Virus record (IMG/VR): IMGVR_UViG_3300037042_002125
Location: 124,001-188,000 of that record
Length of the DNA stretch: 64,000 bases
Strand: one strand, 5' to 3'
The stretch's first letter is position 1; each line of letters begins with the position of its first letter. Positions 6,333 to 63,684 of the stretch are shown piece after piece. The notes under the pieces are model-generated. The model made no database searches and was not told the DNA's origin. It was given only the letters and a program-made list of their open reading frames with translations. Both the position numbers and the translations under genes were made by a program.

Positions 6333-6758
6333 ATGGCAATTGATCCACAACGTCCAAGACTATCTGAGCAGACAGTTAACGTCGTTTGGTTAGACGTTAA
6401 CACTCTGTTGGGAACAGGTCTTAAACCCGACTTGCTTCCCGACGTGAACGCTATAAATAATAGTTTGTACAATTTGTTCCGGTGTCCAGTAGGCGCGCGA
6501 GGACCAATATTCCAACCAGAGTATGGTTCAAGCATTTTTAAGCTATTGCATGAACCTTTGGATTACATAACGGCCAACAAGGTTAGGATGTTCACAATAC
6601 AAGCCATTCAAAGATGGGAACCTCGCATTGTTCTTGACATGGCACGGTCCAGAGTAGATCCTGATCTTAATAGAAACGCTTACATGGTTTCAATCTACTA
6701 CTCTATAGTGGCTACAAAGCAACTTGGAAATGGCTCTTACATACTAGGTAAATCATGA
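6333..6758 (+). CDS. Baseplate wedge gp25/gpW-like protein
   Basis: FQPEYGS....L.EP and AIQRWEPRI motifs. Confidence 0.88.
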   Translation: MAIDPQRPRLSEQTVNVVWLDVNTLLGTGLKPDLLPDVNAINNSLYNLFRCPVGARGPIFQPEYGSSIFKLLHEPLDYITANKVRMFTIQAIQRWEPRIVLDMARSRVDPDLNRNAYMVSIYYSIVATKQLGNGSYILGKS

Positions 6759-8476
6759 CAATTGAACTATCAAACATATCGCCAGACTTCAATGACCTGG
6801 TTTCACAACTGCAAACAATCCTAGCCTCAAAGGATACCTGGAAAGATCGTCTTACCACGTCTACTGGGCAGACTTTGATTGAAATGATTGCGGCAATCGG
6901 CGCTTATTCTCAGTACAGCATAGAGAGTGCGTTCCAAGAGAACTGGCCTCAAAGTGCCAAGAATGCCAACTCCCTGTATGCAGCCAGTAACTTTATGGGC
7001 GTTCGCGTAAATCGTAAAGGTCCCTCCTCCATAACAATCAACTTTGTTGCTCCTAGTGCAGTGTCATTGCCTGCATACAGCCAGTTCACAGGCGTGGGTA
7101 GCTATTGGTTTAATCGCGACCCAATTGTCTATGACCCTGATATTCTTACTCCCCTCCCTGTTGTGTTGTATCAAGGGCAAGTAAAAACAGAAAATTTCTA
7201 CGGACTAGGCAGCAACTTTCAAGCCTTTATAACAACAGAGACAGCATTCACTGTAGCTGACCAAGACATTACGTTAGAAATAAATAACGTAAGTATACCT
7301 GTAATACAGGAGGGCCTATGGACTAAACCGACTTTACCTGGTGTTCAGGATATGACTTTGCCTTCGGGGCAAATGATGCTTCTGTTTGGTAATGCAATCT
7401 ACGGTTCCCTTCCTACAGTAAATGACCTATGCACCGTAACGTATGTGGTCACGTTGGGGGTTAACGGAGACAACATACCAACGCTTAGCCAGAAATTTAA
7501 TCTTGAGACTGATACAACTAAATACGGTATTGCTACAACGCAAGCTTCTGGTGGCGGTGATCAAACAAGTTACCTAGTGTACAAGAATATAACGCCTGCT
7601 TTGTTTGGGGCGTTTAGTTCTTCCGTAACGGGTAACCAATACAAACGTCTACCTATACAGTACCCGGGTGTTCTAGATGCCAAGACGTTCTCCCAACGAG
7701 AGATAAACCCCTTTGCATTGACCTGGATGAACGTAATCAAGGTCTGTTTGTTGACCAATACCGTCATGGATACTGCTCAGTGGCATGCTTTTGAGACATG
7801 GTACTTAGACCAAACAATGTATAGCACTAGAATCTATAGACAAGATCCTATAGCGAGCAATGTCAATGTAAATGCAAAAGTCTATTGCAAGAATTTTGCC
7901 AATACAAGCGATGTTCATGTTAACACAATAGCCGCAGTAGCCGCAGTGTTCCAACCAAGACAAGGTATCATAGGCCTTGATATCTACAGGTCAGACATAA
8001 TCAATGCAATTTTGCAAGCAGATTCAAATGTTGAGTACGTGGTATTGAATTCTCCTGCGACAGATATCATCTTGTCCTCCTTCATTGTGGACTTTCCAAC
8101 TTGCACGGTTATTCCTTCTGGGGGAACCTTGGCCGTAGGGTACTATGACTACTGCATATCTGCCACGTCATCTCTTGGCGGAGATTCTGCCCCATCTAAG
8201 TGGACTACTGTTCACATAACTGTTCCTAATTCTAGGATTGTTTTGTCGTGGGCCCCAGTTACAAATTCTGTTGGGTACAAAATATGGGGTCGTACAACAC
8301 CGACTCCATTAGGGTTGTTGGCAACCGTTAGCGTCTCTACATTGACCTGGACAGACAACGGAACAGTAGTGCCAGTAGGAAGTGTTCCAGTTGAAGGAAC
8401 AATAGAAACTTACTACCCTAGGTTGAACAGCAACGTACAGGTTATAGGTTACTCAAATCGAGATACGCTTAGTTAA
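6755..8476 (+). CDS. Baseplate wedge gp6/gpJ-like protein
   Basis: DF..L...L N-terminus, ASGG.D and A.T...Y region; synteny after gp25; C-terminal Ig/FN3-like segment. Confidence 0.8.
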   Translation: MTIELSNISPDFNDLVSQLQTILASKDTWKDRLTTSTGQTLIEMIAAIGAYSQYSIESAFQENWPQSAKNANSLYAASNFMGVRVNRKGPSSITINFVAPSAVSLPAYSQFTGVGSYWFNRDPIVYDPDILTPLPVVLYQGQVKTENFYGLGSNFQAFITTETAFTVADQDITLEINNVSIPVIQEGLWTKPTLPGVQDMTLPSGQMMLLFGNAIYGSLPTVNDLCTVTYVVTLGVNGDNIPTLSQKFNLETDTTKYGIATTQASGGGDQTSYLVYKNITPALFGAFSSSVTGNQYKRLPIQYPGVLDAKTFSQREINPFALTWMNVIKVCLLTNTVMDTAQWHAFETWYLDQTMYSTRIYRQDPIASNVNVNAKVYCKNFANTSDVHVNTIAAVAAVFQPRQGIIGLDIYRSDIINAILQADSNVEYVVLNSPATDIILSSFIVDFPTCTVIPSGGTLAVGYYDYCISATSSLGGDSAPSKWTTVHITVPNSRIVLSWAPVTNSVGYKIWGRTTPTPLGLLATVSVSTLTWTDNGTVVPVGSVPVEGTIETYYPRLNSNVQVIGYSNRDTLS

Positions 8477-8490
8477 CTCTAGGACACATA

Positions 8491-9237
8491 ATGTCAAACA
8501 TTGTTAGAAGCACATTGCTTCCTCCTTATTTAGAAGACAGTCCTGCGTGGGCAGACCTAACCGACTCTATCGACGCAGTGTTTGGATCTAAGATTGACGA
8601 TCCAACTCACTGGTTGGCTCGGTTAAGAGATACTTGGATTCTCACTGCCACAACAGAAGGACAACTAGCTGACGCTTCCTTGATGATCCAAAACAGCGAT
8701 TTTGAAGCTATAGAAAAGAACATCTTGATACGTCAAGCTAACATGATAGGTTTTGATCTTGTCGATTCAAACACAATGACTAGCGATCAATACCAACGCA
8801 TGGCTAGATACTTGGCCAAGTATTGGTATGGCAAAGGTACATTCCAGGTACAGAACTTTTTAGGGTTCATAATAGACGCATTGATTACGTTCACGAACAT
8901 GTGGTCAATACAAGGTCTAACATATGACACATACGGACCACTTCTCCCAGAAGGGGATCCTGGTATAGGTGCTCCTATCTGGGAAGGTGGAATTTGGTTT
9001 CCTACAACACACATTGAAGTAGGCATTGATTTGACAAACTCTTATCAAGGTTGGCCTGTTGGATCAACGGCTAGGCTTGCAAAGCTTGTCTATTCTCTTG
9101 CCAACTACAACCTAGTTATCTACAATGTAATCTTGAACATTGGTATTTGGGTACACTCAGTTGATGATCCAAAGATAGGCATAATTGTTACTGCCTGTCC
9201 TTGGGAAGAGATCATAGAAGAGATCGAAACGGTTTAG
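8491..9237 (+). CDS. Baseplate wedge gp7/gpI-like protein
   Basis: LLPPYL N-terminus and GKGT motif; synteny after gpJ-like gene. Confidence 0.6.
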   Translation: MSNIVRSTLLPPYLEDSPAWADLTDSIDAVFGSKIDDPTHWLARLRDTWILTATTEGQLADASLMIQNSDFEAIEKNILIRQANMIGFDLVDSNTMTSDQYQRMARYLAKYWYGKGTFQVQNFLGFIIDALITFTNMWSIQGLTYDTYGPLLPEGDPGIGAPIWEGGIWFPTTHIEVGIDLTNSYQGWPVGSTARLAKLVYSLANYNLVIYNVILNIGIWVHSVDDPKIGIIVTACPWEEIIEEIETV

Positions 9238-9263
9238 CATACATTAATCTAGCTGTGGGTATT

Positions 9264-9272
9264 TAATTTAAT
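9264..9272 (+). promoter_or_regulatory. TAATTTNAT motif (putative late promoter), in the loop of a hairpin at 9250-9279
   Basis: TAATTTAAT in the intergenic gap, upstream of the AAGGAG RBS and TTG start. Confidence 0.55.
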
Positions 9273-9293
9273 ACAGCTACAAGGAGAAGAATT

Positions 9294-11003
9294 TTGAACT
9301 CAGGCTTTCTAATAACAGACGCAGGTTTAGCAATTGCGACTGCTGCCCTCCCTGGTGGCCCTTACATTCACATTGCAGAGTTTAGAGTAGGTTCGGCTTA
9401 CGGCTATACACCCACCCGTAGTCAAAGTGCTCTAGTTGGATCTACTTTGTATGCTAGTGCTGCTACTGCCTACACCATCATTGATATAAACATCTCTCAA
9501 GTTATGTTCATTATGCCTAACACAATAGGCTCTTGGAACTTTGGCGAGGTTGGCATATATTTGCAAGACGGAACTTTGTTTGCTATTTGTGTGTGGGATG
9601 TACCACAAGAAAAGATCAAGGCAGTTGGTTCACAGTTTGGCAATACGTGGAAGATCAAGAGTTTGCTTAAGCTGGCACAAGCGCCTGCGATTGTAGAAGT
9701 GAATTTGATCAATAGTCAAAACATTCTTGAAGTTCCCAATTGGGAGTCCTTGCTCGCACCGTCTGACCAGCCAACAAATTCAAACATAGCGATTGTTCAT
9801 GCTGATGACGAGAATGGTAAACCTGTTCTTGTTGTTCGTGATGAGGATTATGACTGGGGATTAATAGCTTACGCAAAGGTTTTTGCAGGTTCTGTTTCTG
9901 ACCCTGGAGCAAGTGCTACAGCTGACACGTTCACAAACCCAGGTATCATACCATTGTGGTTTGGTGTTCCCAATGCTACGTCACGTTACCTAGTTAAGTT
10001 TTCAAATGGGCAAATCAGAATTCTGACAAATAGGTTGTCTGATGATACCATACAGTGGGCAACTGCTCTTGGTGCCCCACCTGTTGGGGCTATCAGCATA
10101 TGGCAAGACATAAGTTTCTCAGATGCAATATACTGGGCAGATACCTACGAATACAACAAGATGATCTTGAACTTCAATCCGTATTGGGCTACTCCCAATG
10201 GAGTTTATCCAGGATCTAATCGTGGTTTCAACGAAACGGCTTTTCCTGTATTGGCAAGAAAAACTACGTCTACAGATTGGACAATCTTACTTAATGCTAT
10301 TCGTAATACTAGCAAGACGTTGGGCGTCGACCCTGCCCCAGTTACTGGTTTCAATGATTTCATCTACCACGCAGACAACGCAGAGCTAATAGGTCTTGAA
10401 ACCGTAAGGGAACGTTGGGATGCTACGGTTGCTCAAATTGTCAGCCTGTACGCTAATCGCAACGTTGTCAACTTGCTGTACCAAGCTCTTACTGCGTATG
10501 CTCCTGAAACGTATTCTTTGTATTGGGGTGGAACAAAGAATCACTACTTTGATTTTACCTACGCAGATGCTAATATGCGTCAAGGTATGCTTAATAGTGG
10601 ACATGCGTTGAACATAACGCCGTCAGTGACAAGTCCTACCTCTGCCGCTTGGGTAAAACTGCAAACAGATTTTGCATCCTTCGGTGCCATTAGTTTGACG
10701 CCAACTGGCGTAACTGCCTCAGCGTCTTGGCACCCAACCAGTATTGGCCTACAAAACTTGACTGGAACAGATCAGTTGCTAGCCTCTTTTGTTAACCAAC
10801 TGTCTTGGACAGTCTACGTGTATGGCAAGATCGTCGGTAATGCAATACGCATAACCTTCAGTATGATAAATTTAGGTGGGGCATACTACTACTACTACTA
10901 TGCGTCACCTGGTACAATAAATTTTGCATGGTCTTCTAGAAAGGCTAGCTTACTTGCTTCTCCGATTCAACCAACTCCTTTGCTAACGTACACTACGGGC
11001 TAA
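9294..11003 (+). CDS. Tail-collar/fibre attachment protein
   Basis: TTG start with AAGGAG RBS; N-terminus (ITDAG...FGEVGIY) resembles tail-collar fibre anchors and the N-termini of both fibres. Confidence 0.65.
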   Translation: MNSGFLITDAGLAIATAALPGGPYIHIAEFRVGSAYGYTPTRSQSALVGSTLYASAATAYTIIDINISQVMFIMPNTIGSWNFGEVGIYLQDGTLFAICVWDVPQEKIKAVGSQFGNTWKIKSLLKLAQAPAIVEVNLINSQNILEVPNWESLLAPSDQPTNSNIAIVHADDENGKPVLVVRDEDYDWGLIAYAKVFAGSVSDPGASATADTFTNPGIIPLWFGVPNATSRYLVKFSNGQIRILTNRLSDDTIQWATALGAPPVGAISIWQDISFSDAIYWADTYEYNKMILNFNPYWATPNGVYPGSNRGFNETAFPVLARKTTSTDWTILLNAIRNTSKTLGVDPAPVTGFNDFIYHADNAELIGLETVRERWDATVAQIVSLYANRNVVNLLYQALTAYAPETYSLYWGGTKNHYFDFTYADANMRQGMLNSGHALNITPSVTSPTSAAWVKLQTDFASFGAISLTPTGVTASASWHPTSIGLQNLTGTDQLLASFVNQLSWTVYVYGKIVGNAIRITFSMINLGGAYYYYYYASPGTINFAWSSRKASLLASPIQPTPLLTYTTG

Positions 11004-11059: not shown

Positions 11060-18991
<7,932 letters not shown>

Positions 18992-19272: not shown

Positions 19273-19313
19273 AACGCCGGGACCAATTAAGTTTGGTTAC
19301 CCGGCGTTTTCTT
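19273..19313. terminator. Rho-independent terminator between convergent genes
   Basis: AACGCCGGG-ACCAA...TTGGT-TA-CCCGGCGTT followed by TTCTT. Confidence 0.75.
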
Positions 19314-19325
19314 ATGCCTTATGCC

Positions 19326-20447
19326 TTACGGCTTAGCAACATCTATTTGGCTAAGAATCTCTCTTAATTTTGTGCTAGTTGAGTCTATTTCTAGACCTTG
19401 GTGCACCAACATCTCTGCTTCACTAAGGCGATCCAAATTGAAGTTAGCCTTTGCGCCTAACTCGTATGGCACAGCAGACCAAGATTCAGGCTCATTGATA
19501 TAATGAGAAGGTCTTTCCTTTATATCTAATGCCCTGTTGATTGCGAACAGCATACCCGCCCAATCACACTGTATCTCCAACACTTTTGCCAAGTGTACCC
19601 ATGGCTCACGTGCCGTAGCATCTTCAGCGCAGGCTTTGAATGCCCATTCAAGAGAGTTTATACGGTTTCCCTTGCCTACAAAACACCTACTGATGTATCT
19701 CATAGACGCAGCGCGTTCAGCTAGCCACTTTGCTCTTGGCAAACTAAGGTGACGTACCAACTCGTCTATTGCTTTATCGAATTGACCATAATACATCAAC
19801 TCACGCCCGTAGTAATGAGAATTTCGATCGTCTTCTGGTTCTTCTTCTACAGACATTTTCAGCAATGGCAAGTAAGATGACCTCGACTTGGTGCTGTCTG
19901 GAAAGTGGTGCAACTGGAACCCATGGCAATAAATTGGCTGCTCTGACTCTCCATTTAGATATGAGTTAGTGATTTCATGCACAGGTTTCACCCAACGATA
20001 ACCATCTCTTGTATGAATCTTTTCATACCAGAAGGTTGTCCCGGGTGTACCATCAGGGTTGAAGTTCCACGTGTACAGATATTTTACACGCAGATTCTTT
20101 CCAACTCCACCGATCTTCCCTCCGTTCTCAACCCAGCACTTCTCCAATGCTGCTCGCCAGCCTGGCGTCAAGATTTCATCTAGATCTGTACAGACGCATA
20201 TGTCAACGTCAGCAGACACGAGGTGCATGGATGTGTTTCGCGGCAAGTCAAACCGCCAAGGTTTGAACACACCAACTTCAACATGAACACCACGGGCCCG
20301 TAATTTATCAACAGTGTCGTCTTTGCTGCCTGTATCTAAGACAACAATTTCGTCTGCCTCGTGCATACTATCCATCCAACGATCAACGAACTGTGCCTCG
20401 TCTTTGCATATAGCGTACACTGCTATCTTAGGTCTTGCTTGCGTCAT
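19326..20447 (-). CDS. GT2-family glycosyltransferase with C-terminal TPR repeats
   Basis: KIAVYAICKDE, VLDTGSKDDT, WRFD..RN, DLDE (DxD) and VHE motifs; helical TPR-like C-terminus. Confidence 0.88.
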   Translation of the reverse strand: MTQARPKIAVYAICKDEAQFVDRWMDSMHEADEIVVLDTGSKDDTVDKLRARGVHVEVGVFKPWRFDLPRNTSMHLVSADVDICVCTDLDEILTPGWRAALEKCWVENGGKIGGVGKNLRVKYLYTWNFNPDGTPGTTFWYEKIHTRDGYRWVKPVHEITNSYLNGESEQPIYCHGFQLHHFPDSTKSRSSYLPLLKMSVEEEPEDDRNSHYYGRELMYYGQFDKAIDELVRHLSLPRAKWLAERAASMRYISRCFVGKGNRINSLEWAFKACAEDATAREPWVHLAKVLEIQCDWAGMLFAINRALDIKERPSHYINEPESWSAVPYELGAKANFNLDRLSEAEMLVHQGLEIDSTSTKLREILSQIDVAKP

Positions 20448-20578
20448 TTCTTTGCCTCACATTTGTGTTTCAATAAAGGGATACGAAGGACTGTGAACAG
20501 CCAGCCTAAGTACCCTACATTTTCTTGGCAACCACTACAGATGTACCGAGTGGTTGTTACTACTCGTAAAGGTTCCAT
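20444..20578 (-). CDS. 44-aa putative Zn-binding protein (not in ORF track)
   Basis: Manual translation MEPLRVVTTTRYICSGCQENVGYLGWLFTVLRIPLLKHKCEAKK; CxxC...HxC; its stop overlaps the GT2 start (ATGA). Confidence 0.6.
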   Translation of the reverse strand: MEPLRVVTTTRYICSGCQENVGYLGWLFTVLRIPLLKHKCEAKK

Positions 20579-20582
20579 TGTC

Positions 20583-20792
20583 CTACTCTCTTATCTCAAG
20601 TAGACGCCTAAATTCTGCCGCTTTATGTCTCATACCATACTCGTAGGCAGTGTTCATCAAGTGTGCAACTTTCCACGCAGGGATAGGCATATCTTCTTTT
20701 GGAACAGACACTGTGCGACACCCGCCTGTGTCATCGTGTTCGCAAATAACTTGGCCCTCTGCTTCTAACCATAGAAATTTAGGGTGGCTCAT
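20583..20792 (-). CDS. Hypothetical protein (69 aa)
   Basis: Fills the gap in the operon with an ATGA overlap. Confidence 0.6.
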   Translation of the reverse strand: MSHPKFLWLEAEGQVICEHDDTGGCRTVSVPKEDMPIPAWKVAHLMNTAYEYGMRHKAAEFRRLLEIRE

Positions 20793-22387
20793 ATTGATTT
20801 ATCTCTCAATTCTTCGTACAGTGCGTCGAAACCAGGGCCCCAGCACCATGGGTTATTGTCATAACCGCTGCTCTGAGTAGTACATTGTTTTGCCTTTTCA
20901 ATCGCGTAGGTTGCTTGGTTTGCAGGACCAACCTCTTTGAAAAAGAGTGCCAGTGTTACCCACCGTTCCCTAGATGAAGGTGCTAAGGAGCACGCCTTTC
21001 GGTAGTGCATCTGAGCTTCCATTATATCAATCGGTTTCCAATACCCACCGAGAATTAGATGAATGTACGACGTGTCGCAGCCTGGGATGTCTATGGCACT
21101 TGCAAGAGCCTCAATTCCATCCATACGGCGACCTGCTTTGACCAACTCATCAGCGTAGAAGAACCACGACTTCCAGACTTTAGGATCTTCCTTTAGTGAT
21201 TGTTCAAGCAGTGGTAAGTACGTGTGCTTACCTTCCTTCATATCGGGTTTTTGTGTCATCAGGAAACCACCAAGCCATGCCCATTGCTCTGCATGATCTG
21301 TGCCTGTGTAGACTAGAATCTCATGCACAGGCAGCTTCCATCTCCAGTTGTGGCGAGTGTGGATTCGTTCATGCCAATGAGAAGATTTGTTGGTACTTTC
21401 TGCATCACTGGCAATGGTACGCCAGTCCCATATGGTCTGGAAACGACAGTTGTATTTGTCGTACAGACGACCTCTAGTCCTGTAGTGCATCTGAATCTCA
21501 CCGTACAGAATGTCGTACCACCCATCTTGGAGGTATTCATCTAGATCAAGAGAGATACAGAGATCAACATCTTGAGGCACAAGCATCAACGCATTGTTAC
21601 GAGCGTCATCGAAGCGCCACGGTGCAACGTGTGTCTGGTAGACGTTAGTTACCCCGCCTTTTAGAAGTATTTCTTTAGTTGCGTCCTTACTTCCCGTATC
21701 GCAGATCACACTGTGATCAGCGTACACCACAGATGCGGCAAAACGAGCGGCAAACTGTTCTTCGTTCTTGCATATACCATAGACAGCAATCTTTGGGCGA
21801 AGCAGATTCAGAAGTTCTCTTTGGTATATGTCTGACGCCATGAAGTAAACCCCTATCTCATTCTCAATCCCGTACTCCACAATGAGATTTCCAAAGGTAG
21901 ATATAACTTCTTCGTGTGTCCAATCATCTTTGACGTGCTTCTCGAATGGGTTTCCATCATATTCATCTTGTGGGTAGTGACCAAGGGGGATGCTCATAAC
22001 AAGATACTTACAAGAGTCACTCAGAGTATTAAGAAGATAGACTGCCTTTTCTTTTTCCATGTGCTCTGCGACGTCGCCAACAAAACAGATATCAATCTTT
22101 TGTGGCGTGTAGATGCCAATGAAATCTCTAGCAACCAGTACAGCATCTTTTTCGTACAGTTTGTCATATTTATCTGGTAGACTATATTTTTCGATGTAAG
22201 GTCTCCAAATTTCTATTCCAATCCACTCTGTTCGAGGTTTAGGCAGCAGCCCTTTTCCGTACCTGTCGTAATAGGTACCGCTACCAACACCTACGTCTAA
22301 GACACGAAGATTGTTGTTGTGAGCGCCAGCAATCCGCTGAACTGCTCTGTCAATGAGATGTTTTCCTGAGTTTGAACTAAATGGCAT
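20789..22387 (-). CDS. Fusion: class I SAM methyltransferase + GT2 glycosyltransferase + TPR
   Basis: VLDVGVGSG motif I and GDVAEH; then KIAVYGICKNE, DTGSKD, WRFDDARN, DLDE and VHE motifs. Confidence 0.85.
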   Translation of the reverse strand: MPFSSNSGKHLIDRAVQRIAGAHNNNLRVLDVGVGSGTYYDRYGKGLLPKPRTEWIGIEIWRPYIEKYSLPDKYDKLYEKDAVLVARDFIGIYTPQKIDICFVGDVAEHMEKEKAVYLLNTLSDSCKYLVMSIPLGHYPQDEYDGNPFEKHVKDDWTHEEVISTFGNLIVEYGIENEIGVYFMASDIYQRELLNLLRPKIAVYGICKNEEQFAARFAASVVYADHSVICDTGSKDATKEILLKGGVTNVYQTHVAPWRFDDARNNALMLVPQDVDLCISLDLDEYLQDGWYDILYGEIQMHYRTRGRLYDKYNCRFQTIWDWRTIASDAESTNKSSHWHERIHTRHNWRWKLPVHEILVYTGTDHAEQWAWLGGFLMTQKPDMKEGKHTYLPLLEQSLKEDPKVWKSWFFYADELVKAGRRMDGIEALASAIDIPGCDTSYIHLILGGYWKPIDIMEAQMHYRKACSLAPSSRERWVTLALFFKEVGPANQATYAIEKAKQCTTQSSGYDNNPWCWGPGFDALYEELRDKSI

Positions 22388-22407
22388 GAGGTTGTCCTTT
22401 CATAGTT

Positions 22408-22415
22408 TATTTACA
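22408..22415 (-). promoter_or_regulatory. TGTAAATA motif (putative phage promoter)
   Basis: About 20 nt upstream of the MTase-GT start, in the sense orientation. Confidence 0.6.
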
Positions 22416-22428
22416 ATGTGGCATAGGC

Positions 22429-22442
22429 TAATTTAATTTAAT
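22429..22442 (+). promoter_or_regulatory. Two overlapping TAATTTAAT motifs
   Basis: TAATTTAATTTAAT upstream of the PKD remnant and endolysin. Confidence 0.5.
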
Positions 22443-22666: not shown

Positions 22667-23293
22667 ATGACCTCCTTTAATCTGATACCAAAATTGACGC
22701 TTGACCACGAAGACTTCGAAGCTTGCGCCAAGCTTTTGGGTTGTTCAGTAGACGCGGTTAAGGCAGTATCTCTTGTTGAGACAAACGGCGGCGGTTTCAA
22801 TCCAGATGGGTATCCTAAAACATTGTTCGAAGGTCACTACTTCTCTCGTTTGACTGATCACAGGTTCGACAAAGAATATCCAACTATTTCCTACCCCAAG
22901 TGGACAAAACAATTCTATTGCAAGAATTGGAAGGACGAACATGCAAGGTTGGTACTTGCCTCGACGTTAGATCAGGAGGCTGCTCTTAGGTCTGCGTCTT
23001 GGGGCATGTTCCAAATCATGGGTGACAATTACAAACTTTGCGGATTCTATGACGTAGTTCAGTTTGTAAATGCTATGTGTGAGGGGGCATCCCATCACTT
23101 AGAAGCTTTTACACACTACGTCATAAACCGACACCTCAACGACGAGCTACAAAATCTTGAGTGGGCAGACTTTGCACGTCAGTACAACGGACCAGGACAA
23201 GTAGCTGTATATAGCAAGCTTTTAAGTGATGCCTATGAGAAAATAGTACATGCGCCTGGCGCAGATCAGGAGGATGCCAAGAACGAAACTTAG
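22667..23293 (+). CDS. Endolysin, N-acetylmuramidase (DUF3380-like), catalytic domain only
   Basis: AV..VE..G.GF, LFEGHYF, SASWGMFQIMG.NY and FARQYNGP motifs. Confidence 0.88.
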   Translation: MTSFNLIPKLTLDHEDFEACAKLLGCSVDAVKAVSLVETNGGGFNPDGYPKTLFEGHYFSRLTDHRFDKEYPTISYPKWTKQFYCKNWKDEHARLVLASTLDQEAALRSASWGMFQIMGDNYKLCGFYDVVQFVNAMCEGASHHLEAFTHYVINRHLNDELQNLEWADFARQYNGPGQVAVYSKLLSDAYEKIVHAPGADQEDAKNET

Positions 23294-23302
23294 GATATTA
23301 CC

Positions 23303-23653
23303 ATGTCAAATCAAGATCAAAATCAAAAACCACCCCAGCAAGATCCATCATACACCTTCGCAAGAATTGCGTATGACCAGAATTGTATCTTTGTATTCAA
23401 TCGCAAATGCTTAAAGGCTAGTTCCGAAAATCTTTACGGTCTGACCTTAGGGTTTGCCTATGATTCCAAGGGCTACCCAATCTGCACAGCTGGCATTGAC
23501 ATACGAGAATTGCATAGACAAATGACGCAAGTTCTATTCGATGCACGTACTATTTATTTTTCAACAATTGACTCAATAGATCAGCGGTTAAAAACTCAAA
23601 TAGCTGACGCTGTCATAGCCTTCGATGCACAGGCAGCTGAACATGTCGAGTAG
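23303..23653 (+). CDS. Hypothetical protein
   Basis: 116-aa ORF with AGGA RBS. Confidence 0.6.
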   Translation: MSNQDQNQKPPQQDPSYTFARIAYDQNCIFVFNRKCLKASSENLYGLTLGFAYDSKGYPICTAGIDIRELHRQMTQVLFDARTIYFSTIDSIDQRLKTQIADAVIAFDAQAAEHVE

Positions 23654-24437
23654 CAAAGGCGTTCTACTCTTCTCCTTCAACAATGAGGCAATGCGGTATG
23701 ACTTGATGGCCCTAGAATGTGCTAGGCGTGTAACACTACAGCTAAACTTACCAGTTGTAGTTGTTACTGATGCACCCATCAAAGGTCTTGACTGTATATT
23801 AGTTGAAGCACCTGCAAAAAACTCTAGGTACTACCCAGATGCCAAAGCAAACCTTAGCTTCCTAAACGGGGCTAGGGTTAACGCCTATGACCTATCCCCT
23901 TTTGATGAGACACTTGTAATTGACACTGACTATCTTCTACAGACGCCTACTCTTCTAAAAGGGTTTGACTACCCTGGATTGAAACTGACTAAGAGAGCCG
24001 TAAACGTAGGTCTAAAGACAATGACGGATGATATGCGTATCATAGGATCATCTGGCATAGAGATGTATTGGGCTACAGTGTTGTACTTTGATCGTTCAGA
24101 TCTATCAAAACTATTCTTCCAATATTGGCGTAAGGTACTAGACAACTGGCAATTTTATGTATCTTATTTTGGCCTTCCAAATGGGTTGGTTCGTAATGAT
24201 TTTGCAGCCACATTGGCTCTCTATAAAATCTATGGGAAACTAGGAATCCCTAACGACATTGATACAGGGTTAGGCTTAACTTTGTGTACGCTACCTATGG
24301 ATTGGGTCATAACGTCTATTGATCCCATTGCGGTAAAAAGTCATACAGGTACAGTAGCACAATTAGAAAATATTGATGTTCATGTACTTAACAAGAAGTC
24401 TCTATTAGGATTGCTTTCAAATGAATACCAACAATAA
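23643..24437 (+). CDS. GT-A fold nucleotide-diphospho-sugar transferase-like protein
   Basis: GVLLFSFN, AYDLSPFDETLVIDTDY (DxD), MYWATVLYF and RNDFA motifs. Confidence 0.65.
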   Translation: MSSSKGVLLFSFNNEAMRYDLMALECARRVTLQLNLPVVVVTDAPIKGLDCILVEAPAKNSRYYPDAKANLSFLNGARVNAYDLSPFDETLVIDTDYLLQTPTLLKGFDYPGLKLTKRAVNVGLKTMTDDMRIIGSSGIEMYWATVLYFDRSDLSKLFFQYWRKVLDNWQFYVSYFGLPNGLVRNDFAATLALYKIYGKLGIPNDIDTGLGLTLCTLPMDWVITSIDPIAVKSHTGTVAQLENIDVHVLNKKSLLGLLSNEYQQ

Positions 24438-25212
24438 TCTCACTAGAGGAGTGTTGACGTTTGCCTACGGGTATGAATATCAACGCATGGCATACGCACA
24501 AGCTTTGACTTTAGCTGATCTAGATACGCCACTTACTGTGGTTGTCCCATACTTAGAGTACCCAAAACTTGCCGAAGTGGCGGTAGTTATAGAGTTCAAA
24601 GAACCTATGGCTAAATTTGAGTGGGAAGCCTACGCTTACGATTTGTCACCGTATGACGTAACCATAAAGACAGACTGCGATGTAATTTTCCCTTTAGGAT
24701 TTGATATCCAACACTACTTCGACCAAGTAGAAAAGATTGGTCTAGTATCTGGACAATCTTGTGACTTAGAGTCTGAGGCTGTTGATTGTTCTTGGTACAG
24801 GAAGAAAGAACTTGAGTTAGGTTGGCCTAGTTTTTACGTTGCAATATATGGGTTCACAAAAGACAGAAGCTTGTCTTTCTTCGAGTATGCAAAGAACCTG
24901 TTTATAATCTGGTGGAAACTCAAACCTATATTAGGTTCCCTTCCTCCAACAACAGACTCTGTGTTCAGCTTAGCTTACAGAGACATAGTTGGCACAAACC
25001 AAATTGAAAACGGGCTAAACTTCATTCACGCCAAACAAGGCGTATGTGGAGATATGTTTTTAGACAACTGGTCCGCTAGTGTTCCTCATCACATTAGTCA
25101 AGAAGGTACATTGTATGTCAATGGGCATAAAGTTTTCTTGCCCTTTCATTACGTTGATAAAGACTTCCTATCAAAAACAATTATGAGTGGCATAAGAAAT
25201 GTTCTACGTTAA
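24421..25212 (+). CDS. Second GT-A fold transferase-like paralogue
   Basis: GVLTFAY, AYDLSPYDVTIKTDCD (DxD), TDSVFSLA and FHY..K motifs; aligns with the preceding gene. Confidence 0.62.
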   Translation: MNTNNNLTRGVLTFAYGYEYQRMAYAQALTLADLDTPLTVVVPYLEYPKLAEVAVVIEFKEPMAKFEWEAYAYDLSPYDVTIKTDCDVIFPLGFDIQHYFDQVEKIGLVSGQSCDLESEAVDCSWYRKKELELGWPSFYVAIYGFTKDRSLSFFEYAKNLFIIWWKLKPILGSLPPTTDSVFSLAYRDIVGTNQIENGLNFIHAKQGVCGDMFLDNWSASVPHHISQEGTLYVNGHKVFLPFHYVDKDFLSKTIMSGIRNVLR

Positions 25213-25699
25213 TTACCACCCTCGCTCTGGGTTAATCTTAAGTGTTAGCCAATGCAAAGAACAGGATGCTCTTGAGATCACACAAGAAGAGTACCTAGAT
25301 TTTATGACTAACCCAGGAGCCATTACGAGCTATTGGGTGTTAGTAGACCAAACTACCGGTCAGGTTACTCTTGTTAAGCAAGTGCAAAATAACTTTTCAC
25401 CAAACCCAAGTATCTTTTTGAAACAGAGTACTACTCTACATGAGGACTTTGTGTTCTATGCTGACATAGATTCCGGTGAGATTACTTTGAAGGTCAAAAA
25501 TCCTTTGGATGTAAACAGAACAGATATTCGCATCCATGGAATGCTTAATGGTGATATATGGCAGGAGGTTCAGACAGTGGTGTTTAAACCAGGTGTCTTC
25601 ACATCTACTACAAAGGGAGAATACTCTCTGGAAAGCTATATGTGGTATGTTGAGAGACCGCTTTTGGACAAGACTTATGGAATCACCTATACAAAGTAA
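25199..25699 (+). CDS. Hypothetical protein co-transcribed with the GT-A pair
   Basis: Overlapping start; 166 aa. Confidence 0.6.
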   Translation: MFYVNYHPRSGLILSVSQCKEQDALEITQEEYLDFMTNPGAITSYWVLVDQTTGQVTLVKQVQNNFSPNPSIFLKQSTTLHEDFVFYADIDSGEITLKVKNPLDVNRTDIRIHGMLNGDIWQEVQTVVFKPGVFTSTTKGEYSLESYMWYVERPLLDKTYGITYTK

Positions 25700-26657: not shown

Positions 26658-27185
26658 GTGAACCAATGCCATCGTAATAGTTCAAAGCTGTGGTTCAACC
26701 ATCAGAGCGACTACTCAATTGTGACAGGGTATGTGTGCGTTGCCGACCGTTGGTATGAGCATACGTGGCTACTTGATAAGGACAACCGCATAGTCGATAC
26801 CACTCTCAAGAACGGTTCTGCTTACTACGGAGTTCTTTTGTCTCGCAAGGAGGCGAAAGAGTTTGCAGCCAACGAAGGCGTGGGTGCAGACTATAGGGAT
26901 TGGTCTAAACAAGAATGTGAAAACGCTCAAGAAACTTTGCTGAAAATACTAATGTCCCAGCTGTCTCAAGATGATGCAAAGACAAGAGATCGCATACTCA
27001 AAAAGAAAGGCTGGTCAAGCAAGGACCAACTTGACATGGCAAGAATCAACAGCGACATTGCCCATGTGGAGTATGCAAATTGGTGGTCACGGTACAAAGG
27101 TGATACAAAGATACTCTTGAAAGAACTTGAACTATGGTTGGACAAACCAACTCTCAAAGCGTTCAGGGCCAAAGTTAATCTTTGA
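26658..27185 (+). CDS. Hypothetical protein (possibly extends to ATG 26555 via a +1 shift)
   Basis: CHRN...TGY...W.EH.W motif; GTG start. Confidence 0.6.
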   Translation: MNQCHRNSSKLWFNHQSDYSIVTGYVCVADRWYEHTWLLDKDNRIVDTTLKNGSAYYGVLLSRKEAKEFAANEGVGADYRDWSKQECENAQETLLKILMSQLSQDDAKTRDRILKKKGWSSKDQLDMARINSDIAHVEYANWWSRYKGDTKILLKELELWLDKPTLKAFRAKVNL

Positions 27186-56175: not shown

Positions 56176-56790
56176 ATGCTAATGCTGTTGCAAAAGACTT
56201 TCATGGATGACACAGGTACGCCATATGCGAATTACCCTGTTGTTATCACTGAGTGTGGTTCAAACAATCCTGTTCGCCTGTACACCCAATCAGGGTTGTT
56301 GATGGAACGTTTTGGAAATACAAAAACAGATTCAGACGGAATCATTTCTGTGTATGTGTCAGATGAAAAATTCTATGGCGCAAATCTTTTTAATCCCTCA
56401 AACGGGTTGAAGGTACAAAGTGTATACCGTCTTGACGTTGGTAATGGCGCTGACGTTCGCGTTGGCCCAACTGGCGCAGCCTCTACTGTTACTGGACCTA
56501 CAGGACCGTCTGTCACAGGACCGTCTGTCACAGGTCCCACTGGCGCAGCCTCTACTGTTACTGGACCTACAGGACCGTCTGTCACAGGACCGTCTGTCAC
56601 AGGTCCCACTGGTGCTGACTCAACTGTTCCTGGACCTACAGGTCCTCAAGGTGACTCGTTGACGGGACCCACTGGTGCTGACTCGTCAGTCACGGGACCT
56701 ACAGGTGCCGCAGGCAACGATGGGGCTACTGGCCCGACCGGTGCAGACGGTGTGGCTGGCCCAACAGGCCCAACAGGCGCAGCACCCTGA
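56176..56790 (+). CDS. Small collagen-like (GPT-repeat) virion-type protein
   Basis: ~95-aa beta-rich N-domain, then [18 protein letters not shown] repeats; exact 69-bp tandem repeat at 56470-56612. Confidence 0.8.
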
Positions 56791-63105: not shown

Positions 63106-63648
63106 TCAGTCCTTGTTGGTGTTTGAGATAAATGAGCTACGGCTCTTTGGAGTCTCCCACCAATCGACACGAGAGCAGGTAACCCCCAAAGCCTTCATCT
63201 TTATTGAGACTAAAGTGTGCATCCACTTTGCAAAATTCTCGCTCGTTGGTACAAAGTCTACAACTAGCATACCACCATACAGCTCTTGCAATAAAGGGGA
63301 CATTGAATCGTTTTCAACAGTCCATGCTACCTCCACTCCTTCCAGCTCTACTGGTTGTAATCTAGATGTTTCTGGGAATAGAATTAACCTTAGTGGATCA
63401 TTTCTGTCAATGACAAACTTGTGATCAATAAAAGTATTTAGCCACTTCTTAAGCCACTCCAAGTGCCTAAAATCTGTAACCATACCTCGCACCAACGTGT
63501 CTGAGCTTAAAAAGACTTGAACTTTTGCTTCATGGCCGTGCAGATGCCTACAGGCGCATTTCAAGTCTTCTGAAAATCTACCGTCTAATTCTTGACTCCA
63601 AACTCTATGGCCATAACAGAACTCAAAAGTCTTATCAATGTTGAACAT
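63106..63648 (-). CDS. queD: 6-carboxy-tetrahydropterin synthase
   Basis: F.YGHR, C..LHGH, DF, DH.F, PTSEN and WET motifs. Confidence 0.93.
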   Translation of the reverse strand: MFNIDKTFEFCYGHRVWSQELDGRFSEDLKCACRHLHGHEAKVQVFLSSDTLVRGMVTDFRHLEWLKKWLNTFIDHKFVIDRNDPLRLILFPETSRLQPVELEGVEVAWTVENDSMSPLLQELYGGMLVVDFVPTSENFAKWMHTLVSIKMKALGVTCSRVDWWETPKSRSSFISNTNKD

Positions 63649-63670: not shown

Positions 63671-63684
63671 TAATTTTATTTACA
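63671..63684. promoter_or_regulatory. Overlapping divergent motifs: TAATTTTAT (+, 63671-63679) and TGTAAATA (-, 63677-63684)
   Basis: Divergent gap between queD and the next ORF. Confidence 0.55.

What the first reader, a model, noticed from the sequence alone, without database searches (positions are those of the whole stretch)
19326..22415. Methyltransferase-GT2-TPR fusion heading a small GT operon with two microproteins
Seen: an N-terminal SAM-MTase (VLDVGVGSG) fused to a GT2-TPR paralogous to the stand-alone GT2 downstream. Between them are a 69-aa ORF and an unlisted 44-aa CxxC/HxC ORF coupled to the GT2 start. The operon is preceded by the TGTAAATA box rather than the putative late box. 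Inference: sequential glycan extension plus O-methyl capping, expressed before substrate synthesis. The early-type promoter also leaves open a DNA or host-envelope target.
Basis: partly seen in the sequence, partly recalled or inferred. Interest (0 to 1): 0.6.

Follow-up and report, generated by a model that had tools for sequence, protein, structure and literature searches.

The report
Phage operon likely glycosylating collagen-like tail fibre
A freshwater jumbo phage carries a conserved pair of SunS/SgtA-type protein glycosyltransferases, one fused to a methyltransferase, beside its giant threonine-rich collagen-like tail fibre, so it most likely coats that fibre with methylated sugars, which has not been described for a phage fibre in the papers I searched.

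Summary
On the minus strand, 22387..19326 carries four tightly packed genes:
- a 532-aa class I methyltransferase + GT-A + TPR fusion;
- a 69-aa ORF;
- a 44-aa CxxC/HxC ORF;
- a 373-aa GT2-TPR paralogue (36% identical).

A TGTAAATA box lies 20 nt upstream of the first ATG.

The fusion is not unusual. More than 2,000 full-length relatives exist, and in all 10 contexts read it is followed by the stand-alone GT2-TPR.

This GT2-TPR family is tightly linked to GPT-rich collagen-like genes:
- directly upstream in 59 of 80 Bacillota species;
- in 13 of 20 viral loci, against 0 of 80 control loci;
- next to the fusion pair in the related phages.

Here the neighbour is a 2,643-aa fibre with 119 GPTG motifs. 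The biochemical precedent is C. difficile SgtA, which glycosylates BclA3.

Relatives of the methyltransferase domain sit inside glycosyltransferase cassettes, which favours sugar O-methylation.

Both small ORFs are real genes but are variable inserts, not part of the conserved module.

TGTAAATA precedes replication genes, so it looks early or middle. No expression data exist. No biochemistry was done.

The parts
22408..22415 (-). TGTAAATA promoter-like box, 20 nt upstream of the fusion's ATG
   Evidence: Genome-wide, 18 of 32 copies are intergenic. The motif precedes DNA polymerase, SSB, primase and QueD genes.
20789..22387 (-). 532-aa fusion of a class I SAM methyltransferase (aa 1-190; nt 21818-22387), a GT-A/GT2 domain (aa 199-385; nt 21233-21793) and a TPR-like domain (aa 391-531; nt 20795-21217)
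20583..20792 (-). 69-aa ORF, start overlapping the fusion's stop (ATGA); function unknown
   Evidence: phrog_14051, E 1e-5. 61% identical to a 71-aa ORF at the same position in L026. 5 of 5 strain substitutions are synonymous. Absent from L023, L024, L025, L030 and L031.
20444..20578 (-). 44-aa CxxC...HxC small ORF, stop overlapping the GT2 start (ATGA); probable zinc-binding microprotein, a mobile small phage gene
   Evidence: Homologues P0123-P0125 lie in unrelated phage contexts. No counterpart in any related GT operon.
19326..20447 (-). 373-aa stand-alone GT2-TPR protein glycosyltransferase, the proposed initiating O-glycosyltransferase
   Evidence: phrog_13126, E 2e-98. Weak hits to SunS, ThuS and GmaR. 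67-76% identical to phage orthologues and 50% to Brevibacillus. Orthologues directly follow collagen-like genes in 59 of 80 Bacillota species.
19273..19308 (.). Strong hairpin between the convergent fibre and GT transcription units; likely terminator
   Evidence: Free energy -27.5 kcal/mol, z -3.7, with a U-run on the + strand.
11060..18991 (+). 2,643-aa tail fibre, the proposed substrate: N-terminal fibre domain, GPTG-rich collagen-like region (aa 289-1676; 119 GPTG; 24% Thr), beta-helix-like repeats and a C-terminal Peptidase_S74 chaperone
23625..25212 (+). Two distantly paralogous ORFs (270 and 263 aa) with a GT-A fold like retaining glycosyltransferases; possible further members of a glycosylation island
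   Evidence: Model with pLDDT 82.5. Foldseek hits to alpha-1,3-GalT, UGGT and glycogenin at E about 1e-6. Atlas lead. D85 and D87 invariant. Conserved next to the muramidase in relatives.
22429..22441 (+). TAATTTAATTTAA, the second promoter-like box, pointing away from the GT operon towards the muramidase
   Evidence: The same box precedes the fibre-like gene at 9294 and the collagen-like gene at 56176.

Best explanation
The operon encodes a two-enzyme protein O-glycosylation system for the phage's own collagen-like virion proteins, chiefly the neighbouring 2,643-aa GPTG-repeat tail fibre.

Proposed mechanism, all steps inferred:
1. The stand-alone 373-aa GT2-TPR binds the extended Thr-rich repeats through its TPR-like domain. 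It transfers a first sugar from a host nucleotide-sugar to Thr (or Ser) hydroxyls, as C. difficile SgtA does on BclA3.
2. The fusion enzyme, an ancient paralogue, extends the glycan with its GT-A domain.
3. Its N-terminal SAM methyltransferase O-methylates a sugar, capping the chain.

Both enzymes are soluble and cytoplasmic. They are probably made from an early/middle promoter (TGTAAATA), so they would be present when the fibre is translated late.

The 69-aa and 44-aa genes are independently acquired small phage genes lodged between the two enzymes. They are not needed for the chemistry.

Shown here: the domain architecture, intact catalytic motifs, the fold relationship, the conserved gene pair, and the strong linkage to collagen-like genes.

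Inferred: the substrate, the order of action, the sugar, the methyl acceptor and the timing.
For: Fold and sequence relationships:
- The profile hits GmaR at 1.3e-13, SunS at 3e-8 and ThuS at 2e-7. All three glycosylate proteins or peptides.
- The DxD and DTGS motifs are invariant.

Linkage to collagen-like genes:
- 59 of 80 bacterial species have a collagen-like ORF ending a median of 86 nt upstream of the orthologue on the same strand. Only 5 other collagen-like ORFs occur elsewhere in those loci.
- 13 of 20 GT-anchored viral loci have a collagen-like ORF, against 0 of 80 muramidase-anchored control loci covering 1.14 Mb (Fisher p 1e-11).
- 10 of 20 distant (24-30% identical) Clostridia homologues are also linked, in most of them with the collagen-like gene directly downstream of the GT, as for sgtA-bclA3.
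- Collagen-like genes flank the fusion pair in L023, L025, L233 and L030, and lie 7 kb away in L024. The cultured phage DSL-LC01 shows the same arrangement.
- Some partner proteins carry Pfam Collagen and BclA_C domains.

Conserved gene pair: the fusion is followed by the stand-alone GT in 10 of 10 contexts read.

Precedents:
- SgtA (GT-A + 4 TPR) adds beta-O-GlcNAc to Thr of GPT repeats in vitro (PMC7157674).
- C. difficile flagellin GT2, a GT plus methyltransferase domain, adds and is proposed to methylate rhamnoses (PMC5207246).

Methyltransferase domain:
- Stand-alone relatives lie inside GT cassettes: Phrappuccino gp142-145, and a GT25-methyltransferase-GT25-epimerase cassette.

Other:
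- No membrane segment and no DNA-methyltransferase motif.
- The substrate is rich in acceptor sites: 119 GPTG and 24% Thr.
Against: - There is no biochemical, proteomic or expression evidence for this phage.
- The complex prediction of GT2-TPR with a fibre 45-mer gave no answer.
- The phage fibre is only imperfectly collagen-like: its longest Gly-X-Y run is 10 triplets.
- The two bacterial genomes with the fusion pair (Brevibacillus, Desulforamulus) show no collagen-like gene within 8 kb. The pair can therefore serve other substrates.
- The methyltransferase fold does not discriminate between sugar, protein and small-molecule acceptors.
- Orthology to SgtA itself was not tested.
- The GTs and the fibre appear to use different promoter classes.
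Confidence: 0.6

Rival explanations
1. The enzymes glycosylate a different protein. Candidates are another virion protein, such as the 204-aa or 760-aa collagen-like proteins, the capsid or the tail tube as in mycobacteriophages, or a host protein such as flagellin or pilin, as GmaR does. On this view the proximity to the big fibre is only partly relevant.
For: - GmaR is the best profile hit in the PDB.
- The genome has two further collagen-like ORFs.
- Bacterial fusion pairs occur without a collagen neighbour.
- The early/middle-type promoter would suit action on host proteins.
Against: - The GT-collagen adjacency is conserved across hundreds of genomes and in the related phages.
- The other collagen-like proteins would be the same kind of substrate, so this is partly a variant of the main explanation.
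Confidence: 0.17
2. The enzymes build or modify a glycan that is not protein-linked, namely host LPS/LOS, capsule or cell-wall polymer. This is what database names such as 'beta-1,4-glycosyltransferase' and 'LOS glucosyltransferase' suggest. The effect would be to alter the host surface and block superinfection.
For: - phrog_13126 and GenBank annotations carry these names.
- Structural similarity of the GT-A core alone to TarS, RmlT, WrtF and SpsA.
- The genome has other sugar genes: an epimerase, a UDP-Glc dehydrogenase-like gene and another GT.
Against: - The names are inherited, not tested.
- There is no membrane anchor.
- The full GT+TPR match is to peptide glycosyltransferases.
- Linkage to collagen-like genes is unexplained by this reading.
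Confidence: 0.1
3. The adjacent microproteins are the substrates. The SunS-like enzymes would S- or O-glycosylate the Cys-containing 69-aa or 44-aa peptide, making a glycocin-like product.
For: - SunS and ThuS are the closest folds.
- Both small ORFs contain Cys and lie between the GTs.
Against: - Most related operons have no small ORF, or unrelated ones, between the two GTs.
- The 44-aa homologues lie far from any GT.
- One Cys of the 69-aa ORF is not conserved.
- There is no leader peptide, transporter or thiol-disulfide genes.
- The NCBIfam SunS score is 28.6 against a cut-off of 350.
Confidence: 0.03
4. The operon modifies phage DNA, by base glycosylation and/or methylation, to evade restriction.
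For: - The promoter box is shared with replication genes and QueD.
- Phage GTs commonly modify DNA (cited in PMC12619734).
Against: - No (D/N/S)PP(Y/F/W) motif.
- No thymidylate-synthase-like hydroxymethylase or TGT in the genome.
- Homologues abound in bacteria beside collagen-like genes.
- The fold is that of peptide glycosyltransferases.
Confidence: 0.03

Closest known systems
Clostridioides difficile SgtA acting on BclA3 (spore-surface collagen-like glycoprotein)
   Same: - About 360-aa GT-A + TPR enzyme.
- Encoded next to a GPT-repeat collagen-like protein.
- Transfers sugar to Thr of the repeats (PMC7157674).
- The same adjacency is seen here and in most homologues.
   Different: - Here the genes are in a phage and the partner is a tail fibre with an S74 chaperone, not an exosporium protein.
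- There is a second, methyltransferase-fused paralogue.
- Sequence orthology to SgtA was not tested.
- The donor sugar is unknown.
SunS / ThuS glycocin S-glycosyltransferases (PDB 7msn, 7msp, 7msk)
   Different: - Only 12-18% identity.
- Far below the NCBIfam cut-off.
- No glycocin precursor, transporter or disulfide genes.
- The acceptor here is probably Thr-O rather than Cys-S.
Listeria GmaR flagellin O-GlcNAc transferase (PDB 22ao)
   Same: Best sequence-profile hit for the GT domain (E 1.3e-13). It is a GT2 + TPR protein O-glycosyltransferase.
   Different: GmaR also acts as an anti-repressor and targets flagellin. There is no methyltransferase domain.
C. difficile type B flagellin GT1/GT2 (CDR20291_0241/0242)
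   Same: An initiating GT2 plus a second GT2 carrying a methyltransferase domain, proposed to add and methylate rhamnoses (PMC5207246). This is the same division of labour as proposed here.
   Different: - The substrate is flagellin.
- The domain order and homology of that fusion were not compared here.
- Methylation by that domain is itself only proposed.
Mycobacteriophage virion glycosylation operons (Freeman et al. 2023, seen here only as cited in PMC12619734 and PMC12801897)
   Same: Phage-encoded GTs decorate virion proteins. A stand-alone relative of this methyltransferase domain (35% identity) ends the GT operon of phage Phrappuccino.
   Different: - Those glycans are reported on the capsid and tail-tube C-termini.
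- The GTs are of other families.
- No TPR and no collagen-like substrate.
Mimivirus L230 collagen glucosyltransferase
   Same: A virus-encoded enzyme that glycosylates the virus's own collagen-like proteins (PMC9614988).
   Different: - L230 hydroxylates Lys and glucosylates hydroxylysine.
- Different fold family.
- The fibre region here has almost no Lys: 6 in about 1,390 residues.

Membership tests
GT2 / GT-A inverting glycosyltransferases (Pfam PF00535) | GT-A alpha/beta fold | tested here: met
GT2 / GT-A inverting glycosyltransferases (Pfam PF00535) | DxD metal/nucleotide-sugar motif and N-terminal nucleotide-binding motif | tested here: met
   DTGS plus DLDE are invariant in both paralogues: D230-S233, D281/D283/E284 in the fusion, and D38-S41, D88-E91 in the stand-alone GT.
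GT2 / GT-A inverting glycosyltransferases (Pfam PF00535) | Score over Pfam's gathering threshold (23.3 bits) | tested here: inconclusive
   18.8 and 21.1 bits by hmmscan. 23.0 bits, counted as 23.3 with neighbouring matches, for the stand-alone GT in the genome search.
SunS-family peptide S-glycosyltransferases (TIGR04195) | GT-A domain followed by a helical TPR-like substrate-binding domain | tested here: met
SunS-family peptide S-glycosyltransferases (TIGR04195) | Equivalog score (cut-off 350 bits) | tested here: not met
   28.6 bits, N-terminal 72 residues only.
SunS-family peptide S-glycosyltransferases (TIGR04195) | Adjacent glycocin precursor with paired Cys, plus transporter and thiol-disulfide genes | tested here: not met
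   None in the window. The small ORFs are not conserved with the GTs.
SgtA-type collagen-like-protein O-glycosyltransferases | About 360-aa GT-A + TPR architecture | tested here: met
   SgtA's architecture is taken from PMC7157674.
SgtA-type collagen-like-protein O-glycosyltransferases | Gene adjacent to a GPT-repeat collagen-like protein gene | tested here: met
   Window fibre. 59 of 80 bacterial species. Phage relatives.
SgtA-type collagen-like-protein O-glycosyltransferases | Sequence orthology to C. difficile SgtA | not tested
   No reference sequence of SgtA could be obtained through the tools.
SgtA-type collagen-like-protein O-glycosyltransferases | Transfer of a sugar to Thr of GPT peptides | not testable with these tools
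   Needs an enzyme assay. The complex prediction gave no answer.
Class I SAM-dependent methyltransferases | Seven-stranded Rossmann-like fold | tested here: met
Class I SAM-dependent methyltransferases | Motif I (GxGxG) and acidic residue after strand 2 | tested here: met
   VLDVGVGSG and E59 are invariant in 49 homologues.
Class I SAM-dependent methyltransferases | Pfam methyltransferase model over threshold | tested here: not met
   13.9 and 12.7 bits against a cut-off of 27 for the window's domain. Homologues carry PF13649, PF08241 or PF13489. The profile hits 3cc8 at 2.7e-7.
DNA N6-adenine / N4-cytosine methyltransferases | (D/N/S)PP(Y/F/W) catalytic motif | tested here: not met
   No such motif in any of the four proteins.
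Bacterial collagen-like (BclA-type) glycoprotein substrates | Gly-X-Y repeats rich in GPT | tested here: met
   121 GPT; Pfam Collagen matches in the fibre frame. The runs are short, at most 10 triplets.
Bacterial collagen-like (BclA-type) glycoprotein substrates | BclA C-terminal (C1q-like) domain | tested here: not met
   The window fibre ends in Peptidase_S74 instead. BclA_C is present in the partner of L013.

The most novel reading that the evidence does not exclude
A phage of a probably Gram-negative freshwater host densely O-glycosylates and methyl-caps more than 100 threonines of a 2,643-aa collagen-like tail fibre with its own enzymes, making a mucin-like bottlebrush fibre. The same GT2-TPR clade would then be the general, so far unrecognised, glycosylation partner of collagen-like surface proteins across hundreds of Bacillota species and many phages. 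That would make glycosylated collagen-like fibres a widespread class of phage and spore surface structures.
Probability: 0.45. Interest if true: 0.7.

Novelty: new variant of a known kind. Interest (0 to 1): 0.55.

Why it matters
Virion glycosylation in tailed phages is, as far as the papers found here show, documented experimentally only for mycobacteriophage capsid and tail-tube proteins.

Collagen-like tail fibres are common in phages, but whether they are glycosylated like BclA-type spore fibres is unknown.

This locus offers a compact, testable system of two soluble enzymes plus a repeat peptide. The comparative data suggest that the GT2-TPR and collagen-like gene pairing is a general rule.

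If confirmed, it would explain:
- how such fibres resist proteases or recognise hosts;
- why annotations such as 'beta-1,4-glycosyltransferase / LOS glucosyltransferase' in jumbo phages are probably wrong;
- where to find enzymes for site-dense Thr glycosylation and sugar methylation.

Tried and rejected
- Near-identical DNA search against cultured phages: no match.
- Complex prediction of the stand-alone GT2-TPR with a 45-residue fibre segment: score 0.01, 'no answer'. This is neither support nor evidence against.
- phmmer of the methyltransferase domain alone against the PDB: nothing. The profile was needed to find 3cc8.
- Sigma-70-type promoter and simple terminator scans found nothing meaningful in the intergenic regions. 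The hairpin at 19273-19308 was found by folding.
- The search for related loci cannot take the 44-aa ORF because it is too short. With the 69-aa ORF it found only two 15-residue matches.
- Alignment A3 wrongly mixed prohead-protease homologues (L023:7059-7868, L025:4991-5788) with the GT-A-like ORFs. It was redone as A4.
- No RNA run holds the phage, so timing could not be tested.
- Freeman et al. 2023 (PMC10527164) is not held.
- The idea that the fusion is a unique invention of this phage is rejected.
- The idea that the paralogues arose by local duplication is rejected. The same ordered pair exists in Brevibacillus, Desulforamulus and a 395-kb phage contig.


Full report
**Setting**

The window is bases 124001-188000 of a 222,078-bp IMG/VR virus record, estimated 93% complete. 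The genes around the finding are those of a tailed jumbo phage:
- baseplate wedge, tail-fibre-like proteins, prohead protease and primase;
- an N-acetylmuramidase.

Its DNA polymerase is closest (36-39% identity) to the jumbo myoviruses Burkholderia BCSR5, Achromobacter Motura and Ralstonia phiRSL1. This hints at a betaproteobacterial host but is only a lead.

Near-identical DNA occurs in lake-water and sediment metagenomes from about ten independent studies. None of these runs is RNA.

**Anatomy**

The minus strand carries four tightly packed genes:

| Coordinates | Product |
|---|---|
| 22387..20789 | 532 aa, fusion |
| 20792..20583 | 69 aa |
| 20578..20444 | 44 aa |
| 20447..19326 | 373 aa, stand-alone GT2-TPR |

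- The fusion/69-aa junction and the 44-aa/GT2 junction are both ATGA overlaps.
- A hairpin at 19273-19308 (-27.5 kcal/mol, z -3.7) separates the operon's end from the convergent unit on the plus strand.
- That convergent unit is the 2,643-aa fibre gene (11060..18991) plus a 100-aa ORF.
- On the other side, a 279-nt divergent intergenic region leads to the muramidase (22667..23293).

**The enzymes**

An alignment of 49 full-length homologues gave a confident model of the fusion (pLDDT 94.6, pTM 0.90). It has three domains:
- a Rossmann methyltransferase (about 1-190);
- a GT-A domain (about 199-385);
- TPR-like helices (391-531).

Structural and profile matches of the GT-A plus TPR part:
- Foldseek's best hits are the glycocin S-glycosyltransferases ThuS and SunS, E 2e-15.
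- GT-A-only matches (WrtF, TarS, SpsA) are lower.
- The family profile hits Listeria GmaR (1.3e-13), SunS and ThuS.

All of these act on proteins or peptides.

Both paralogues keep the DTGS and DLDE motifs. Neither has a hydrophobic segment that could span a membrane; the maximum hydropathy is about 1.05.

The methyltransferase domain:
- It falls below Pfam thresholds.
- It keeps motif I, the strand-2 acidic residue and a conserved G-D-x-x-E-H segment.
- Its nearest solved relative, by both profile and fold, is the uncharacterised B. cereus protein 3cc8.
- It lacks the (D/N/S)PP(Y/F/W) motif of DNA amino-methyltransferases.

**The fusion is common and always paired**

- The word-indexed search returned more than 2,383 hits. 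The best 120 mostly cover 97-100% of the query at 34-68% identity, and they include a Brevibacillus fluminis protein.
- In every context I could read, the fusion is followed on the same strand by a stand-alone GT2-TPR. These contexts are P0007's contig, L023, L024, L025, L026, L030, L031, Brevibacillus L027, Desulforamulus L119 and a 395-kb phage contig L233.
- The two window paralogues are 36% identical.
- The stand-alone enzyme is 67-76% identical to its phage orthologues and 50% to the Brevibacillus one.

The pair is therefore ancient and presumably divides labour.

**The small ORFs**

What lies between the two enzymes varies:

| Context | Genes between the two GTs |
|---|---|
| L023, L024, L025, L030, L031 | none |
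| L026 | 74 + 71 aa |
| P0007's contig | 52 + 84 aa |
| L233 | MazG + 73 + 91 aa |

The 69-aa ORF is a real gene:
- it is 61% identical to L026's 71-aa ORF;
- all five substitutions in a 98%-identical strain variant are synonymous;
- it hits phrog_14051, of unknown function.

The 44-aa ORF is also a real gene:
- three homologues conserve CxxC...HKC;
- they sit among small genes near a DNA polymerase A gene or near RusA in unrelated phages, with no glycosyltransferase nearby.

Both are best read as mobile small phage genes that landed between the enzymes.

**Linkage to collagen-like genes**

This is the main result.

Phage and viral loci:
- The fibre next door has 119 GPTG motifs, 24% Thr over residues 289-1676 and a C-terminal Peptidase_S74 chaperone.
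- Of the loci fetched through the GT, 13 of 20 IMG/VR loci carry a GPT-rich collagen-like ORF.
- The control was 80 muramidase-anchored loci covering 1.14 Mb, and none of them does (Fisher p 1e-11).
- Redundancy among the viral loci weakens that p-value but not the pattern.
- The related phage contigs place a collagen-like gene right beside the pair in L023, L025, L030 and L233, and 7 kb away in L024.
- The cultured Actinomycetia phage DSL-LC01 has two annotated collagen genes just upstream of its homologue.

Bacterial genomes:
- A scan of one genome per species found more than 563 hits.
- The 80 best are all Bacillota: Oscillospiraceae, Flavonifractor, Lawsonibacter, Desulforamulus, Brevibacillus and others.
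- In 59 of these 80 species a collagen-like ORF ends a median of 86 nt upstream of the GT on the same strand.
- Only five other collagen-like ORFs occur anywhere else in those loci.
- Among distant homologues (24-30% identity) from a sample of 301 Clostridia genomes, 10 of 20 are again linked, in most of them with the collagen-like gene directly downstream.
- Partner proteins carry Pfam Collagen and, in some, BclA_C.

**Precedents**

- C. difficile SgtA is 358 aa, with a GT-A domain and four TPRs. It is encoded next to bclA3 and adds beta-O-GlcNAc to Thr of GPT repeats in vitro (PMC7157674).
- In C. difficile type B flagellin modification, GT1 initiates. GT2 carries a methyltransferase domain, adds two rhamnoses and is proposed to methylate them (PMC5207246).
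- Stand-alone relatives of the window's methyltransferase domain lie inside glycosyltransferase cassettes:
  - after gp142-144 in mycobacteriophage Phrappuccino;
  - between two GT25 genes and an epimerase in a metagenomic contig.

Together these favour a sugar as the methyl acceptor. This is guilt by association.

**Proposed mechanism**

- The stand-alone GT2-TPR is sufficient next to collagen-like genes in most bacteria. I therefore take it to initiate O-glycosylation of Thr in the fibre repeats.
- The fusion would extend the glycan and methylate it.
- The order of action, the donor sugars and the acceptor hydroxyl are inferred, not shown.
- The genome offers little donor biosynthesis: one epimerase/dehydratase, a UDP-glucose-dehydrogenase-like gene, another GT and no nucleotidyltransferase. 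Host nucleotide-sugars are presumably used.

**Promoters**

TGTAAATA:
- It occurs 32 times in the genome. Eighteen copies lie in the roughly 4% of sequence that is intergenic.
- It precedes DNA polymerase, SSB, primase, QueD, a UDP-Glc-dehydrogenase-like gene and another GT.

TAATTTAAT:
- This second enriched box precedes the fibre-like gene at 9294 and the collagen-like gene at 56176.
- It also appears on the plus strand at 22429-22441, facing the muramidase.

The enzymes could then be in place before the fibre is made. No transcript data exist to test this.

**Rival readings**

- DNA target: unlikely. There is no DNA-methyltransferase motif and no hydroxymethylase or TGT gene, and bacterial homologues sit beside collagen genes.
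- Lipid-linked or envelope glycan: database names suggest it, but the enzymes are soluble and SunS-like.
- Glycocin-like role for the microproteins: contradicted by their absence from most related operons.
- Another protein substrate remains possible, including the two other collagen-like proteins of this genome.

**Novelty**

The architecture, the enzyme superfamily and collagen-like Thr glycosylation are all known. Two things appear undescribed in the papers I could search:
- the pairing of this GT2-TPR clade, and its methyltransferase-fused paralogue, with collagen-like tail fibres in phages;
- the breadth of the same pairing in Bacillota.

I rate it a new variant of a known kind.

Noticed in passing
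window 23625-24437 and 24421-25212 (+): Two distantly paralogous ORFs with no Pfam or PHROG hit. The 263-aa one folds (pLDDT 82.5) like retaining GT-A glycosyltransferases (alpha-1,3-GalT, UGGT, glycogenin) and has an invariant D-x-D. Both are conserved beside the muramidase in relatives. With the operon this makes four GT domains within 6 kb.
   Followed up: partly
window 22429-22441, 9264, 29752, 47628, 56131 (+) and other genome sites: A second intergenic motif, TAATTTAAT, is enriched upstream of genes (12 upstream regions; about 15-fold). It precedes fibre-like and collagen-like genes, so it is a candidate late promoter box.
   Followed up: partly
window 63106-63648 (-), TGTAAATA at 63677-63684: A QueD-like 6-pyruvoyl-tetrahydropterin synthase gene (phrog_2389, E 6.5e-34) hints at 7-deazaguanine metabolism. 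No TGT/DpdA family match was found in the genome with PF01702.
   Followed up: partly
window 56176-56790 (+); genome C1:~25200-25550 (-), outside the window: Two further collagen-like ORFs in the same phage: 204 aa with 11 GPT, and a 760-aa frame with Pfam Collagen hits. These are additional candidate substrates.
   Followed up: no
window 20796 and 19335-19336 (strain variant in run X5): A 98%-identical lake-water variant has a stop two codons before the fusion's normal stop, which removes the ATGA overlap with the 69-aa ORF. It also has an 8-nt insertion at the extreme 3' end of the GT2-TPR gene. Substitutions elsewhere in the four genes are mostly synonymous (34 of 40 listed).
   Followed up: partly
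L204:6001-6141 and L205:725-901: Homologues of the 44-aa CxxC...HKC microprotein occur in clusters of small genes of unrelated phages, near a DNA polymerase A gene and near RusA. This suggests a widespread small zinc-binding phage protein of unknown function.
   Followed up: partly
L013-L015 (IMG/VR contigs), 6592-10066: A collagen-like protein with a bona fide BclA_C domain (E 1e-18) is followed by a roughly 2-kb GT2-TPR match, possibly two tandem GTs. These 'viral' contigs may be prophage or bacterial fragments.
   Followed up: no
L030:4537-5547; L023, L026 and P0007's contig: One relative carries a DnaJ homologue just downstream of the GT pair. DnaJ/DnaK genes and four core glycosyltransferase orthogroups were reported for the aquatic 'moraphage' lineage (PMC12619734). 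Several relatives also carry an Acb1 (anti-CBASS) gene a few kb from the operon. The window ORF at the corresponding place (26658-27185) was not tested.
   Followed up: no
window 11060-18991 (+): The fibre's Gly-X-Y register is repeatedly broken by short inserts of the types ASTVT, SLT and SVT. The longest uninterrupted run is 10 triplets. A classical long triple helix is therefore doubtful despite the 'collagen-like' label.
   Followed up: partly
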